Shown here piece by piece: positions 56,689 through 64,000 of a DNA stretch of 64,000 nt. The stretch lies in NCBI GenBank assembly GCA_976226885.1, contig OZ320313.1, positions 66,154,001 to 66,218,000 of the forward strand, in the 5' to 3' direction. A program made the position numbers and the translations under genes. Below the pieces are notes generated by a model, which saw nothing but the letters and a program-made list of their open reading frames with translations, was not told the origin of the DNA and did no database searches. Source of the stretch: Iphione sp. A-MEVVRFRX5 (Eukaryota). Each line of letters opens with the position of its first letter. Position 1 is the first letter of the stretch.

Positions 56689-57912
56689 TACCTAAAAAAT
56701 ACACATGATTTATAGGTGCTCATTATGCGATTCCTAACTTTACAGTTTTCATACCGCTTGTTCCTTTAAGACATGGACCAAAATAAATAGATTTATAGCA
56801 ACAAAATTTCAATCACAAAAATTATGGAGTATCAAATGCAAATTGTATGTAGGAGAACGTTTATCTTGGCGCTGGGTGACCAAGGATCAGCTCTGAAGAA
56901 CATCGGGTAAATTTCAAGATACTAATCGAATGGCTTCACCCTGTCCTATAGGCCACAAATTTTATTTCGTTCATGTTAGGTTTAAAGCACCCACGGCTTT
57001 GCAGTTTAATAGAATCATTAACATGTTTTATGTAACACATAAATCTAAGGGATTCCTGTGTCACTGTGTGTAGAACTAACCTTTGCCAACAGAGGGCTGT
57101 ACATGTGCTCTCATACTCCTCGCTAGAGGGCGTGCCCTTCGCAGTTAGTACCACTCTTGAGTCAGCCAGACTTTCTACAGTGGTTGTCGGAATCTAGGTG
57201 GTCTGGCTTATTAATTTTCCACTGAGTACGGTTTTGTATCGATAAAATAGATCGCCTTTCTAGGGTTTTTATTTTTTCCTTCATGACATCACCAGTAACA
57301 TCTTTCAGTACTTCTTGTTTCAGTTCGAACTTAATTTATATATTAACAATTAAAAGCGCCCATGTCTTTCTTCATTGATTGATGCTGAACTTATTTGACT
57401 AATGGTTATTTCAAAGGAGCAGTTTTCGCTATTTTTGTTTATCCACACTATTAGAAATAAAACGTCTACTAGTTTTAGTGGAAACTATTAATTTTCCAAT
57501 GGTAACACTTAACCAAACTGTAGCAATTTTTAGATGATTTTAAATAGTTATATAAAATTAGTAGAGAATATGAACTTACCTTAAGTGAAATATGATCAGA
57601 ATTTTGATTCTGATATATGCCCACTAGGGGCACGCATGAGAAGAGGCAGTCACGTGAATCAGCTGGACATGTCAGTTGTTGATAACCAGTTCCTGAAATG
57701 AATGGAAAAAGGGTTACCAACTTGACCAGGGTGGGTGCCCCCTAGGGTGGGCATGCGTGCCCCTAGTGGGCATATATCAGAATCAAAATTCTGATCATAT
57801 TTCACTTAAGGTAAGTTCATATTCTCTACTAATTTTAATTCAGTATATGCCCACTAGAGGGCTCACATGAGACTTTAAAACACCTTTTGAACATGAATGG
57901 AAGGAACTAACC

Positions 57913-59034
57913 TCAAACAATGTCTTTAAGGTAAAAGGTCTTAAAAGTGCTGGCATTTGTCCACATTCTATTCATTATGTCATTGATAGGAATGCCCATT
58001 TGTGACAACTTTGACACTGAAGCAGACCATGTTGAATGAGCAGAGAATTTAGAAATATCAACTCCAGCCAAAGAAAGTACCTCCTTAGTCCATCTTGAAA
58101 GGGTAGCAGTAGTAACAGGTCGGTGAGGAGGCTTAAAACTAATAAAGAGTTGTTGGGCATTGCCCCTTAAAGCAGCTGTTGCCTGAATATAACACTTAAG
58201 GCATCTTAATACACAAATTGAAGGATGTTTAGAAAAGGGATGAAGGAACATTTTAGAGGCAGGACGACCTTTCCTGGAATGCTTAAGGGTAGTAGAAAAA
58301 TTTATCTGCACTGACCCATCATCTAGAAAATGAATGTTAGGTATGTTAATAGACAAAATAGTTTGCAACCTGCCTCAAGATGCTAAAAGCAAAAGCATGA
58401 GGCATTTCATAGATAATTTCTTTAAAGGCAAAGAAGCATTAGGGCGCCACCCCCTAAGGAACTCCAAAACCAGTTGAACATCCCAAACATAATTAATACG
58501 TGCAACGGGCGGCCGAAGATTGAAGAACCCTGTAAGAAGTCTAATTGTATCAGGATGTTTCCCAAAAGAAACACCATCATAGGAAGGAAGAACTGCAGAA
58601 AGGGCACTCCTAGCTGTATTAAGGGCACTGTACCTTATACCCTTGTTGTAAAGATTCCGTAAAAATTGTAATGGTTGAGAAAGGAGAGGGTGAAGGGGAT
58701 CCCAGCCTTTAATAAAACACAATGTATTCCACCTGTTCAAGTAAGAATCATAGAGCAAACGAGTCTTCATATGCCAAGACTGGAAAATAATGTCTTTAAC
58801 TGACTTGGACAACCGCTTGAGATCAACAGCGGCCTTTAAAAGAGAAGGGCCATAATTCCTATATGCCCCATGGCCGGTTGACCCCTGTGATTGAGAAGGT
58901 TTAGGGAGTGTTTTGGGAAGGCCAATTGCTGAAGACTGGACCTCATGGCCTTGCTGAACCACGGACGACTTGGCCATCTTGGGACAACAAGGACAGCATG
59001 AGGAGGAGGATGGTAGGCCAACTTCTGTAGGCAC
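57913..59034 (-). pseudogene. DIRS-A tyrosine recombinase (frameshift near 58370)
   Basis: SAM-like N-terminal part (YSALNTARSALS, GKHP, RPP..YVWDV), catalytic part HSTW (canonical HSTR) and FKTFY; overlaps pol as is typical of DIRS. Confidence 0.9.
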
Positions 59035-60600
59035 CTAGAAATTAAAGAAAAAGGAGGACATAAGTAAGGCATTGAAAAATTGGACCAGTCAAGAGAGAAC
59101 GCATCTACAAACTCAGCTGATGGATCCGGAAGCCAGCTAACATACCTAGGCAATTGAAAATTTAGTCTGGAAGCGAACAAATCAATATCTGGCATGCCCC
59201 ACTCTGTAACAATGTGCTGGAACAATGTAGGGTTTAACTTCCATTCCAAATTGTCTTTGAACTTGCGCGAAGCATAGTCAGCAGAACGGTTGTAAACACC
59301 TGGTATGTAAAAAGCCTTTAAGAAAGAAGACCTCTCTTCTAGGAAAAGCCAGATCTTCTTAGCAATTACTCTGCAAGGTGGAGACTTAGAGCCCCCCATA
59401 TGGTTAATATAGGCGATAGCAGTTGTGTTGCCCGAAAAGACAAACACATTAACATTATGAACAGATCTGAAAAAACTCTTAAGTGCTAAATAAACAGCCT
59501 TAATCTCCAAAATATTTATGTGTAATCCACACTCATGAGGGAGCCAGCGGACCCCTATCGACATGCCATTGTAAGAAGCACCCCACCCATACTCTGAAGC
59601 ATCCGAGGAGAAGACATGGTGAGGCACTATAGGACTGAATTGTTTAGATAACAATGGCAAATTCGTCACCCACCAATCAAGCTCAGAATGAGCTAAAGGT
59701 GAAAGACACATACAAGCATCATACAAACTCCTTCGTACAGCCAAATTCTTTTCCGATTCCAAACCCCTGAGGTGGTTCCTACCATAAGTAGAAGCTCTAC
59801 TGACATCAACAAGTAATCCAATAACCCTAGCCACCTTCCTTACATACACTAGGTCAAACTGGCCTAGAGACAAAATGGCTTCTGTAATTTTCTCCACCCG
59901 AGACTGTGTGGGCCTAATGGTCATTGAACCTGAGTCTACTAGATAACCCAAAAACACCACCTCCTGTTTAGGGTGCAGCATCGATTTTTTGTAATTAATA
60001 AAAAAGCCCAGCTGCAATAGAAGATCAACAGTCTGTTCTATATGCTGGAGGCACTGGTCGTAAGTATCAGCTATGATGAGAATATCATTGATATAAGAGA
60101 CTATCAAAATCCCTTTTTCCCTCAAAAAAGCTAAGGGTGGGGCCATTACCTTAGTAAAGAGCCTGGGAGCAGAGGACAACCCAAAGGGTAAAGCATTATA
60201 CACATAGGTAGACCCATTCCAGGAAAAAGAAAGAAATTTACGATGGAAAGACCAGATAGGAATAGAGTGGTAAGCGTTCTTAAGATCAATGGAAGCCATA
60301 TAGGAAAAAGGAGCAATAAGTGGTAACACAGATTCTAAAGTCTCCATCTTAAAATGTCTATAGAAAATGAACTTGTTAAGCCTGGATAAGTCCAAGATCA
60401 TTCTAAAAGAACCATTGGGTTTAGGGCAGAGAAAGATATTAGAAAAGAAAGAATCAGGAGGTGGGTCTTCTACTAAGGAAATGGCCCCAGAAGCCAGTAA
60501 ATTACCAAGCTCCTCTGCAATAAACCCATTCTTTTTCTGAAAACTTGATGGGTTTGGGTTTGTTCAATTGAAAGGGAGAAAGGGCAAAATCTAAATGGTA
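58836..60600 (-). pseudogene. DIRS-A RT / RNase H / Dam-like methyltransferase ORF
   Basis: ORF 58836-60401: ILDL..HFKME, SIDLKNAY, LPFGLSSAP, YIND (canonical Y(L/I)DD); RNase H SDASEYGWGA and HINILE; MT domain DIDLFAS..DAF..W..CPPF. The N-terminus is frameshifted near 60400. Confidence 0.92.
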
Positions 60601-60686
60601 ACCCGAAATTGCCTGAAGGACCTCAAAATCTGCTGATAGCTGTTGCCAACGTCTCTTACATGAAGACAAGCAACCTGCAACGAAAT

Positions 60687-62110
60687 TTATTTCCTCACCT
60701 GTGACCCTTGCACTTGCTTCTGAGGAACTGCCGGAAGAGCCATCAAGGGAGGGACAGAACCCTGCTGCTGGTTAGATTGAGGTTGAGGCTGGTACTGAGT
60801 CTGCTGCTGGGGGAAAGCACTGTTGTAGGAAAACCTCCTGTTGTTCCTGTATGGACCTCTGTAAAACTTCGATCCACGACCCCTGTAGCGGGGAGACCCT
60901 CTGGACTGATAAGCCTGCCCCTTCTGAAACCCCTGCTTTTTTGACTTATCCACTCTATTAACCAACCTGGATATGTTTTCAGAGGTTTTGAGGGAAGACT
61001 CTAAAGTATCCCCAAAAAGGAGGGTTGCTGAAGGGGGACAGTCTGAAGAAACCAAACGTTTATGTTCTGGTAACAAATGGGGCCGGATATCCTCCCTCCT
61101 GGCTTTAGTGAGCTGGGTGTCAATTAACCCCAAAAGAAACGCCAAATCAGTCAATGTTTTGCCCAGATAGGACACCCAAGCCTGGGGCGGTGTGGCATAC
61201 TGATGGACAATTTCTAGAGCCTTAACCAACATAGACATAGCCGAAACTGTATGGTTCTGAATCCGCTGGGTAGACCTGTCCTTAATTTTGGCCTCCTTTG
61301 ATAAGGATAACCAAACCGGCTCATTGACTCTGACATTTTTAAGCCATTCACTGTTTGATGGAACTGGATAGGCTTTCTTCAGATTTGTGACAGCATCAAA
61401 CACAATGGGTGTGTGAATGCACTTGTCCACAAAAGAAACAACCTTCTCTTTGGCAGGAGGGCCAACATTAGGGTCAGTAGAAAGTTCTGAAGAAGCAGAA
61501 TCCAAAAAATCATGTGGTTCATCTTGATCACGAGAACTCCTGCTATGACCACCGTCACTGTCATTATCAGAACCCGACCCCGAATCTGACTAAGAAACAG
61601 CATGATCCTTCCTAGACCGGGATTTAGGGACTGCTTCACTCCCAAGAGCTGCAACAGTATCTGCAATAACGTTTATACCATCAGCTAAATTCTTACCCAA
61701 ACTGTTGTCTAAGGACTGAATGCCCTTATCCAAGGATTGAATGCCCGAAACAAAAGTCTGCTGAAGACCCAAAATCGCTTGCAACAGAGGGTCACTAGTA
61801 GACGTGGACTGCTGGCCCTGTTGGCTGGACGCAATCAAGGTCTGAGGGGTAAGGGTGGGTGGGGGTGAAGAGGGAGGGGTATTGTCCGAAGGGGTTGAAG
61901 TGGATTGACCCTTGGACTGGCCACCGTCAGGTGTACCGGCAGCCTTGGACTTTTTCACCGGCGGTTCTACTGAACCTTCCTTGTCCAAAACACGTTTTTT
62001 AGATACAGGAGTTCTTTTCAACCCTTTAGTACCTTTCTTGCCCTTCTTCTTGGCAAACTCTGCTTCCTCATCCAAGAAATTATCTAAGGAAAAATGGGGC
62101 GACGCCATAA
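60687..62110 (-). pseudogene. DIRS-A gag-like ORF, frameshifted
   Basis: ORFs 61590-62171, 61379-61666 and 60687-61505; YPVPSN..RVNEPVW..KIKDRSTQRIQ motif typical of DIRS gag; Q/R-rich tail. Confidence 0.8.
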
Positions 62111-62413
62111 TTTCACCGGCTTCAACCGTGTGACACACCAATGGGCAGCCTTGTGGCAGGTGCAAGGGCAAATTAATAATGGAAAGGTTTAGTAAAAAAG
62201 GTCCCCCAAAATAGAAAAAGGCTGGAGAAGATAATAAACAAAATACTTATCCAACACAGTCCACAACAGGCCAGGCCAACTCCACAGAAAAGACCTGCGA
62301 GGCGAAACGAAGTGCGTCCGAGCTGATTCACAACTACCAAGCAACTGACGTGTCCGGCTGATTCACGTGACTGCCTCTTCTCATGTGAGCCCTCTAGTGG
62401 GCATATACTGAAT

Positions 62414-64000
62414 TAAAATTATTAGATTACATGAACTTACAAGTGAAATGTAGTCATGACTTTGTCCTAGGGTGTGGACACAGGTGTCTATCTGAGAAAA
62501 AGTACAGATGGTGCCACTGCAATGAGACCTGATACAACTTACTTTTGAACATCAGGAATCCTGCAATTGGATGTAAGAGAAACCTATGAGGATGAAGGAA
62601 AACTACATACCCTAAGGAAGAGAGAGGTGGCAGATAGATACTTGTGTCTATACCCTTGTACAAAATCATGACTAGATTTCACTGGTAAATTCATTTAATC
62701 TACTAATCTTAGTACCAGGGGTGGACACCAGATGCCTACCTAAGACTTCAAAGCCCGAAGCCTCATAGCTTGAGCGAACAGCCTTTTGATATCCATCAAC
62801 CTGAATATATCCTTCAAGTAGAAAAGCTTAAAAGTTTTCTCATGACTCCACATACTCTCTTCAAAATCTCTGAAAGTGGCATACCTGTCTTAGCCAGCTT
62901 AGATGAAGAGGCAGGCCTAGTGAAATGAGTGGAGAAAACCTGCGGGTCAATACCAGAAAACACCACATCCTCCTTTGTCCACCTAGCCAAGATGGAAGTT
63001 GAAACAGACTTATGACAGTCAGTAAAAGAGAGGAACAAAGAATTAGTCCCTGGATTGGCTCTGAAAGATAGCAATGTAATCCTTGAGACATCTGACAACA
63101 CAAACACTTGGTTGGGCTGCAAAAGGCAACAGCTTGAAGACACACCCACCCTTCTTATAGAGTACTTAAGGGTCTTGGTGAAGACAACCTTTCCCCAACC
63201 TCATGAATGTTGGACAATTGTATGTGGCAGATAATCTGCATTCTACTACCAGTAGCCAAAAGCAGAAGCATGTTACACTTGAGAGGAAGCTTCTCATGAG
63301 ACAAGTATAAAAAAGATTCCAAAAGCTTCAGAAAGTGGAGAACCTTGGACACATCCCGGGTATAGTCCACTGGAGCAATAGGAGGTGTAACATAAAAGAA
63401 GCCATTAAGTAGCCTGATTATGTCCAGATGCTTACCAAAAGCAAAAGCAAAACCTCCAAACAAAGGAAGGGCTGCTGACAAGGCTCTCTTTGGGATGTTT
63501 AAGGTACTATAGTTGATGCCTCTGTTGAACAAAATCATAAGATAATATACCTGTTTGAGATCCCAATCCTTCTCAAAACACAAGGTATTCCACCTCTTCA
63601 AGTACACGTCATAGACCAACCTGCTCATAGGCCTCCAACAGCACATCATAGCTCTTTCTAAAGCAGACAAGTCTTTCCTGTTAAGGACAGTATTTAACAA
63701 AGAAGGGCTACAATTTTTATAGCCACCAACTTTGACAGGTTTCCTAGATAATCTAGGGTGCTGAACTTGGACTTTCTGAACAATAGGGGAGGTTGCCAGG
63801 CAATTTAGAGCACCATGCTGTACCAGGCCCTGTGAGGTCAAGCAGGCACCAGAAACAGGGCTCACCATGGATAGTCCTGCACCAGCTTGGCAATGCACCT
63901 AGGGATCCAAAGAAAGGATGACAGAGGTAAGGCATATGAAAACTTGATCAATCCCATGAAAAAGCATTGATAAATGCAGCTCCTGGATCAGGGTGCCAAC
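62414..64000 (-). mobile_element. Second, older DIRS element (DIRS-B): right terminus, YR and end of MT; continues beyond the window
   Basis: YR fragments (ORFs 63155-63898 and 62814-63149) homologous to the DIRS-A YR; degenerate terminal IR 62414-62463 versus ~62661-62711 with the same architecture as DIRS-A. Confidence 0.88.

What the first reader, a model, noticed from the sequence alone, without database searches (positions are those of the whole stretch)
57553..62711. Self-targeting DIRS: a new element integrated precisely into the terminal att-like core of an older DIRS
The 8-bp core TAATTTTA occurs at the DIRS-A right end (57553-57560), in its ICR circle-junction copy (57830-57837) and at its left end (62414-62421). 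Immediately beyond the left core the sequence is the homologous right terminus of DIRS-B (TTAGATTACATGAACTTAC-AAGTGAAATG versus GTAGAGAATATGAACTTACCTTAAGTGAAATA). The ICR of DIRS-B has the core TAATCTTA (62704-62711). Removing DIRS-A restores DIRS-B end + core + host flank. This is what phage-like site-specific recombination would give if the tyrosine recombinase joined the circular junction to the attR-like end of a resident, diverged element, producing head-to-tail arrays as a safe-haven strategy. DIRS-into-DIRS insertion is known in Dictyostelium; exact end-targeting between diverged animal families is, to my knowledge, poorly described.
Basis: partly seen in the sequence, partly recalled or inferred. 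Interest (0 to 1): 0.75.

Follow-up and report, generated by a model that had tools for sequence, protein, structure and literature searches.

The report
Young DIRS element abutting old one
A young DIRS1-like retrotransposon sits exactly at the end of an old, unrelated DIRS1-like element, joined as if the two formed one circle junction; this fits the known DIRS integration model and its known habit of landing in other DIRS copies, so it is a tidy natural footprint and not a new mechanism.

Summary
DIRS-A lies at 57561-62413 on the minus strand and has RT/Dam-like pol, a YR gene, ITRs and an ICR. It is bounded by TAATTTTA at both ends. Its 5' end abuts the last base of the 3' extension of a second element, DIRS-B (from 62422), whose YR is about 35-41% identical. 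The "8-bp att core" does not hold across the genome. In 22 A-type 5' ends and 17 A-type 3' ends only AATT/ATT is common to both flanks. That is the published 3-bp DIRS "circular junction". A is young: its termini match its own ICR at 113 of 113 bases. B belongs to a uniformly old family (74-90% in 20 copies; 83% here). So A arrived next to a resident B, and the exchange was inside the 8-mer. End-to-end joining is a minority outcome. None of 21 other A 5' ends abuts a DIRS end; 1 of 29 other B 3' ends does. At least 8 B-to-B junctions exist in the genome, far above my estimated chance expectation. No second B-to-A junction was found. No reads or empty site could be obtained. DIRS homing is already published. 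Verdict: interpretation partly supported, a new member of a known kind, moderate interest. The scan held no earlier DIRS note for this genome.

The parts
57553..57560 (-). TAATTTTA at the 3' boundary of DIRS-A. TAA belongs to the element end; TT onward is the former flank of B and the host.
   Evidence: family flank tables
57561..57678 (-). DIRS-A 3' terminus: right extension 57561-57613 and 3' ITR 57614-57678
   Evidence: I1, I4, I10; 78/78 to ICR
57752..57872 (-). DIRS-A ICR: 57752-57829 complements the 3' terminus, 57830-57837 is the junction 8-mer, 57838-57872 complements the 5' terminus
57913..59034 (-). DIRS-A tyrosine recombinase gene. It has an in-frame stop at 58375-58377 and reads HSTW where other family copies read HSTR. 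The C-terminal FKTFYLKD is kept.
58836..60401 (-). DIRS-A pol ORF (RT, with a weak Dam-like methyltransferase match). The RT N-terminus is not in this frame.
   Evidence: RVT_1 E=4.5e-18; Dam E=9.5e-4, below cutoff
60687..62171 (-). DIRS-A 5' ORFs (gag-like 61590-62171 and 60687-61505), not contiguous in one frame
   Evidence: homologous ORFs in other A copies
62342..62413 (-). DIRS-A 5' ITR and 5' terminus (element orientation starts ATTCAGTATATGCCC)
62414..62421 (-). Hybrid junction TAATTTTA between the last base of B's extension and the first base of A. It has the same layout as a circle junction or ICR.
62422..62560 (-). DIRS-B 3' terminus (right extension plus 3' ITR). It ends ...GTAATCTAA where other family copies end ...GTAATCTAC.
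62631..62745 (-). DIRS-B ICR, with TAATCTTA at 62704-62711 (other family copies read TAACTTTA). It is 83-85% complementary to B's own terminus.
62814..64000 (-). DIRS-B recombinase remnant. It is split into separate aligned segments (suggesting a frameshift), no HSTR motif was found, and the element runs off the window.

Best explanation
DIRS-B is an old resident DIRS1-like retrotransposon. Much later, a circular copy of DIRS-A, from a different and recently active family, recombined with the DNA at B's 3' boundary. A's circle junction reads ...CTAC-TAATTTTA-ATTCAG.... B's boundary read ...CTAA-TAA|TTTTA-TATAAC.... The strand exchange fell inside the shared 8-mer, most likely at TAA|TT within AATT. 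That is the point at which every copy of both families switches from element to flank. The result is B-TAATTTTA-A...A-TAATTTTA-host, a hybrid joint laid out like a circle junction. Inferred, not shown: the family's tyrosine recombinase did the exchange. Also inferred: the boundary was favoured because it offers AATT next to the last ~30 nt of the 3' extension, which are conserved between the two families and could act as a half-site (a pseudo-att site). The window's own A copy carries a stop and HSTW in its recombinase. So either it was moved by another copy's enzyme or it mutated after insertion.
For: B's terminus ends at the same base as 30 other copies, and A's terminus begins at the same base as 21 other copies. 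On order of events: A's termini match its ICR at 113/113 and A-family copies are mostly 98.7-100% (a few 90-95%), while all 20 B-family copies are 74-90% and this one is 82.9%. On exchange point: the extension at the B-to-A joint is B-type to its last base, and A's 3' extension is A-type and identical to A's ICR. That excludes a crossover in the homologous extensions. In B, the ICR reads TAACTTTA, 3' flanks read TAATT (29/30 T at position 4) and 5' flanks read nnACTTTA. This places the switch after TAA. On recurrence: 1 of 29 other B 3' ends is followed by a full B 5' ITR (L065), and at least 7 more junction-spanning hits exist. With about 0.043 oriented ATT sites per base and a few thousand DIRS ends, I estimate under 1e-4 such events per insertion by chance. 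The flank and the junction are each unique in the genome. The 3-bp ATT model is published (PMC3266345, PMC7192593).
Against: No empty site, no spanning reads and no circles could be examined (one search listed no run; sequence fetching stopped). Only one B-to-A junction exists among the scored hits, and 0 of 21 other A 5' ends abut a DIRS end. For family A, the case for targeting therefore rests on one event plus the B-to-B analogy. B-to-B tandems could instead arise by homologous recombination of a circle with a resident copy. Recombinase binding to the conserved extension is untested. The genome searches score only 40 candidates each, so counts are lower bounds and the ranking favours spanning hits.
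Confidence: 0.62

Rival explanations
1. Plain coincidence. A inserts at AATT/ATT sites in AT-rich DNA without regard to neighbours, and one insertion happened to use the AATT that borders B.
For: Most A copies (21/21 others) sit in unrelated DNA. Every DIRS 3' boundary in this genome carries TAATT, so it is a legitimate ordinary target. The case was found by a reader scanning many windows.
Against: I estimate roughly 0.006-0.02 such events for about 100 A copies. This uses about 5e7 oriented ATT sites and at most about 3000 DIRS 3' ends (candidate counts). Independent B-to-B joints recur at about 1-3% of ends.
Confidence: 0.17
2. Reverse order: B integrated at the 5' boundary of a resident A.
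For: The final structure would be identical, because both boundaries carry AATT.
Against: A is at 113/113 terminus-ICR complementarity and its family is mostly 98.7-100%. B is at 82.9% and all 20 B-family copies examined are 74-90%, so no young B copies were seen. B's recombinase gene is more decayed.
Confidence: 0.04
3. B and A entered together, as a heterodimeric circle or a chimeric cDNA bridged by an ICR.
For: The joint has exactly the layout of a circle junction. The two 3' extensions are similar enough that an A-type ICR might bridge a B end.
Against: The two elements differ sharply in age: 0/113 mismatches in A against 11-12 of about 70 in B. No second B-to-A joint exists among the scored hits.
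Confidence: 0.03
4. Homologous or microhomology recombination between an A circle and B within the similar terminal extensions, without a site-specific enzyme.
For: The extensions share runs of 9-12 identical bases. Campbell-type recombination of a circle with a resident copy gives a tandem with a circle-type joint, which is a good alternative for the B-to-B tandems.
Against: At the B-to-A joint the extension is B-type to its final base. A's 3' extension is A-type to its final base and 78/78 with A's ICR. So no exchange occurred in the extensions; only the 8-mer itself could have served.
Confidence: 0.06
5. Assembly artefact or later rearrangement that happens to join the two elements.
For: Repeats are error-prone to assemble, and no read evidence could be obtained.
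Against: The window has no N. The assembly has 89 contigs for 1.18 Gb. A's nearest relative is only 93% identical over the 5' terminus and B's is 83% over its 3' terminus, so collapse is unlikely. The joint is exact to the base at both family-defined termini, and the host flank is unique.
Confidence: 0.05

Closest known systems
DIRS1-like retrotransposons with a 3-bp circular junction (Goodwin and Poulter model; survey in Piednoel et al. 2011, PMC3266345)
   Same: ITRs, a right extension, and an ICR complementary to both termini that overlaps on a short junction. Elements begin and end with ATT, the commonest trinucleotide in that survey. No true target-site duplication. RT/RH/MT pol plus a YR with an HSTR motif.
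   Different: In family A the shared flank is more often AATT (4 bp) than ATT. In family B the ICR junction (ACT) differs from the 3' boundary (ATT), which pins the switch point to TAA|TT. The present case adds a joint between two different families.
DIRS-1 of Dictyostelium inserting into DIRS-1 sequences (Cappello et al. 1984, as cited in PMC5633606 and PMC7192593), and 'homing' of DIRS1 reported for zebrafish (PMC5941688)
   Same: A DIRS element lands in or next to a pre-existing DIRS element more often than chance would give.
   Different: The Dictyostelium preference is described as 'without apparent sequence preference' (PMC5633606). Here the joint is exact to the base at the element boundary, involves two families about 35-41% identical in YR, and is a minority outcome (about 1-3% of ends).
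Secondary (pseudo-att) site use by phage and integrative-element tyrosine integrases, and Campbell-type tandem integration
   Same: A circular junction recombines with a chromosomal site that shares a short core and part of the arm sequence, giving head-to-tail arrays.
   Different: No arm-binding or accessory factors are known for DIRS. The natural target is only 3-4 bp. The analogy is from general knowledge and was not tested here.
Tandem TE dimers from double insertion at one site (McGurk and Barbash, bioRxiv 10.1101/158386; listed, abstract start only)
   Same: Two insertions into the same target produce head-to-tail TE dimers that can seed arrays.
   Different: That abstract concerns TEs and satellite arrays in general and does not mention DIRS. 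Here the second insertion reuses the recombination joint of a YR retrotransposon.

Membership tests
DIRS1-like retrotransposon (DIRS order, ITR/ICR type) | Reverse transcriptase of the Ty3/Gypsy-related type | tested here: met
   PF00078 RVT_1 E=4.5e-18, 66 bits against a 29.6 cutoff. The nearest Atlas clusters carry RVT_1 + RT_RNaseH + Dam.
DIRS1-like retrotransposon (DIRS order, ITR/ICR type) | Methyltransferase (Dam-like) domain downstream of RT/RH | tested here: inconclusive
   PF05869 Dam E=9.5e-4, 19.3 bits, below the 28.1 cutoff. It lies in the expected position (residues 386-488 of the pol ORF). Atlas neighbours carry Dam in 10-17% of members.
DIRS1-like retrotransposon (DIRS order, ITR/ICR type) | Tyrosine recombinase gene (R..HxxR..Y; 'HSTR' motif) | tested here: met
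   No Pfam hit. However, about 15 A-family copies read AHSTRSASVSK and end FKTFYLKD with no stops. The window copy has HSTW and an in-frame stop, so the family meets the feature but this copy's gene is defective.
DIRS1-like retrotransposon (DIRS order, ITR/ICR type) | Inverted terminal repeats plus a right extension | tested here: met
   ITR 57614-57678 against 62342-62407 (92-94%, I4 and I10). Extension 57561-57613 is present only at the 3' end.
DIRS1-like retrotransposon (DIRS order, ITR/ICR type) | ICR near the 3' end, complementary to both termini and overlapping on a short junction | tested here: met
   78/78 and 35/35 complementarity around 57830-57837. The same holds in 25 other A loci and, decayed, in 20 B loci.
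DIRS1-like retrotransposon (DIRS order, ITR/ICR type) | Element bounded by the junction trinucleotide (usually ATT) and no target-site duplication | tested here: met
   5' flanks N-A-A-TTTTA (22 copies), 3' flanks TAATT-nnn (17 copies), shared AATT/ATT. A 3-4 bp duplication cannot be told apart from crossover homology by sequence alone.
   Position 1 upstream and positions 6-8 downstream vary between copies. Only 2 of 17 A-type 3' ends read TAATTTTA, and T at position 1 occurs in 8 of 22 A-type 5' flanks.
DIRS homing (preferential insertion at resident DIRS) | Excess of insertions at DIRS sequences over chance expectation | tested here: inconclusive
   Excess is clear for B-to-B joints: 1/29 unbiased, at least 8 genome-wide, against under 1e-4 per insertion estimated. 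These could also come from homologous recombination. For family A there is only this one case.

The most novel reading that the evidence does not exclude
The boundaries of resident DIRS elements are preferred pseudo-att sites. The last ~30 nt of the 3' extension (...ATTTCACT..GGTAAGTTCAT.T..TCTAC-TAA) are conserved between two families whose recombinases are only about 35-41% identical. This stretch would be the recombinase half-site, so one family's enzyme can dock on another family's end and build heterotypic head-to-tail arrays. If so, this joint and the C/T discrepancy in family B are a natural footprint that fixes the DIRS strand-exchange point at TAA|TT. According to the papers read here, DIRS recombinase specificity has not been examined experimentally (PMC7192593).
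Probability: 0.45. Interest if true: 0.5.

Novelty: new member of a known kind. Interest (0 to 1): 0.36.

Why it matters
According to the papers read here, DIRS integration has been inferred from sequence and the recombinase's specificity has not been examined experimentally (PMC7192593). This locus, together with the family-wide flank tables, gives base-level constraints on that step. It shows where element sequence ends and target begins. It shows that exchange can occur at a resident element's own boundary without touching the homologous extensions. It also shows that termini and ICR co-vary within copies, as the templating model predicts. Family A looks recently active, with recombinase reading frames free of stops in several copies, so recombination assays on defined substrates are feasible. 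On a genome scale the effect is small, because most copies insert elsewhere. The 'safe-haven strategy' reading is therefore not warranted.

Tried and rejected
1. Read support and empty-site alleles: the look-up of sequencing runs listed no run.
I did not try another route and used coordinate-only searches afterwards.
3. Paralogous empty site: the host flank 57150-57560 is single-copy.
No pattern within the 35-place limit can separate an ICR from a true tandem joint, so this was dropped.
5. L003 and L029 upstream flanks looked faintly like DIRS extensions by eye, but BLAST with all four terminus queries found nothing there.
6. Hits starting at query 54-64 were considered as insertions into the ICR of a resident copy. 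At least one (C2:52986080) has a normal ICR about 100 nt upstream, so it is a plain tandem with a diverged inner ITR. The idea is left open and not claimed.
7. I looked by eye for 11-13 bp inverted recombinase-binding arms around the junction. Only weak symmetry was seen (AATT-TT-AATT in A, TACTAA-CT-TTAGTA in B), so nothing is claimed.
8. One search compared the wrong ORF pair (pol against YR) and is uninformative.
9. Papers: Cappello 1984 and Eickbush 2008 are not held. No held paper searched mentions precise DIRS tandem joints.
Full report
**What is there**

The window is G000:C1:66154001-66218000 of a 1.18-Gb, 89-contig assembly. On the minus strand, 57561-62413 (4853 bp) is a DIRS1-like retrotransposon, DIRS-A.

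- It has a pol ORF with RVT_1 (E=4.5e-18) and a weak Dam-like match. Its nearest Atlas clusters carry RVT_1, RT_RNaseH and Dam.
- It has gag-like ORFs and a recombinase ORF.
- It has ITRs (57614-57678 against 62342-62407) and a 53-nt right extension (57561-57613).
- It has an ICR at 57752-57872. The ICR is the exact inverted copy of the 3' terminus (78/78), then TAATTTTA, then the 5' terminus (35/35).
- The same 8-mer lies just outside both ends, at 57553-57560 and 62414-62421.

From 62422 a second element, DIRS-B, presents its 3' extension and ITR. Its own ICR is at 62631-62745, with TAATCTTA at 62704-62711, followed by a decayed recombinase gene. B runs off the window.

**The 8-bp core does not generalise**

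I collected other genomic copies of the termini and read their flanks.

- Twenty-two A-type 5' ends read N-A(17/22)-A(20/22)-T-T-T-T-A before ATTCAG.
- Seventeen A-type 3' ends read CTAC then T-A-A-T-T(15/17), then variable bases.

So most of the 8-mer is constant element sequence. Only AATT/ATT is common to both flanks.

This matches the published description. In that description the two ICR halves overlap on a 3-bp circular junction, elements begin and end with NTT (most often ATT), and integration is by recombination with an identical trinucleotide without target duplication (PMC3266345; also PMC7192593).

Family B sharpens the picture. Its ICR junction reads TAACTTTA, its 5' flanks read nnACTTTA, and its 3' flanks read TAATT in 27-29 of 30 copies. 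The switch from element to target is therefore after TAA, in the middle of AATT.

**The joint is exact**

B's extension ends at the same base as in 30 other copies. A's 5' terminus starts at the same base as in 21 other copies. Between them lies TAA+TTTTA, the layout of a circle junction but with arms from two families.

The two families are about 35-41% identical in recombinase protein. At the DNA level they share only a 61-nt patch and the last ~30 nt of the 3' extension.

The extension at the joint is B-type to its last base. A's own 3' extension is A-type and identical to A's ICR. So the exchange happened inside the 8-mer and not by crossover in the homologous extensions.

**Order of events**

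Within-copy complementarity of terminus and ICR is mostly 98.7-100% in A-family copies (a few are 90-95%), even though those copies differ from each other by 7-25%. The differences co-vary between terminus and ICR. This fits templating of the ends at each cycle.

All 20 B-family copies are at 74-90%, and the window's B is at 82.9%. B's nearest relatives are 83% identical against 93% for A. B's recombinase alignment is split into separate segments, which suggests a frameshift, and no HSTR motif was found.

B is therefore an old resident and A a recent arrival. This argues against co-integration and against B inserting beside A.

The window's A copy has an in-frame stop (58375-58377) and HSTW where the family has HSTR. 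It was either mobilised in trans or mutated afterwards.

**Targeted or chance**

- None of the 21 other A 5' ends abuts a DIRS terminus.
- No A-to-A adjacency appears in the coordinates.
- A query spanning the B-to-A joint finds only the window itself.
- Among 29 other B 3' ends, one (L065, C1:59338447-59338717) is followed by TGACTTTA and a full B 5' ITR with downstream ORF2-like and pol homology.
- Junction-spanning queries find at least 7 more such joints, plus several probable ones.

With about 0.043 oriented ATT sites per base and at most a few thousand DIRS ends (candidate counts), I estimate chance gives under 1e-4 such joints per insertion. Observed rates are about 1-3% for family B. 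For family A there is one event, where I would expect about 0.01.

Same-family tandems can also arise by homologous recombination of a circle with a resident copy, so they are only partial support. The cross-family joint cannot arise that way, but it is a single case.

**Limits**

- No sequencing run was listed.
- Genome sequence fetching stopped.
- Each genome search scores only 40 candidates.
- The host flank is single-copy, so there is no paralogous empty site.
- An assembly artefact is unlikely, because there are no N, the joint is exact and the nearest relatives are only 83-93% identical. It is not excluded.

**Comparison with what is known**

The elements meet the DIRS1-like definition. 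The methyltransferase match is inconclusive.

DIRS insertion into DIRS is published for Dictyostelium, where it is described as without apparent sequence preference (PMC5633606, PMC7192593). It is also reported for zebrafish as 'homing' (PMC5941688).

I found no held paper describing base-exact end-to-end joints between different DIRS families. The key primary papers are not in the library, so this absence is weak.

**Verdict**

The event and its order are right, and the mechanism is plausible. The 8-bp att core and the 'strategy' reading are not supported.
- It is a new member of a known kind and of moderate interest.

Noticed in passing
L012:1312-1614 (same locus as L040); L064:1501-2055; L066:1501-2425; L079:1445-1705; L083:1501-2112; L088:1212-1680: Short internally deleted DIRS derivatives of about 260-925 bp. 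They consist of a 5' ITR plus a 3' ITR, and L064 also keeps an ICR (5' ITR-ICR-3' ITR, about 555 bp). They occur in both families. Five of 30 sampled B-type 3' ends belong to such minis. One locus (C17:35333260-35333550, coordinates only) looks like a mini joined in tandem to another element.
   Followed up: partly
L031-L060 (A-family 3' regions): Terminus and ICR co-vary. Copies that differ from each other (for example GTTCACATT, GTTCATCTT, GTTCATTTTATC) carry the same variant in both the 3' extension and the ICR. Within-copy complementarity is mostly 98.7-100% despite 7-25% divergence between copies. This is comparative support for templating of DIRS ends on the ICR.
   Followed up: partly
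L061-L090 and window 62704-62711: In family B the ICR junction reads TAACTTTA, but genomic 3' boundaries read TAATT (T at position 4 in 29 of 30) and 5' boundaries keep the C. The start and end trinucleotides therefore differ (ACT against ATT), as in some elements of Table 3 of PMC3266345. This locates the element-target switch after TAA.
   Followed up: yes
window 58375-58377 and the HSTW codons in 57913-58368 (minus strand): DIRS-A's recombinase has one in-frame stop and a Trp where about 15 family copies have the Arg of HSTR, although its termini are perfect. L053 shows the same HSTW.
   Followed up: partly
L065:1439-1900 (G000:C1:59338296-59338757): A B-to-B head-to-tail tandem with joint CTAC-TGACTTTA-GTACC. 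The upstream copy has an ICR and a full 3' ITR. The downstream copy has a full 5' ITR, with pol homology starting only about 1 kb in, so its gag region is short or deleted.
   Followed up: partly
window 57544-57552 against 62405-62413: The host bases just beyond A's 3' boundary (element orientation TATAACTAT) match A's 5' terminus (ATTCAGTAT) at 5 of 9 positions. This made the inverted repeat I1 extend past the 8-mer. It is probably chance in AT-rich DNA, but it would make the pre-insertion site a slightly better pseudo-junction.
   Followed up: no
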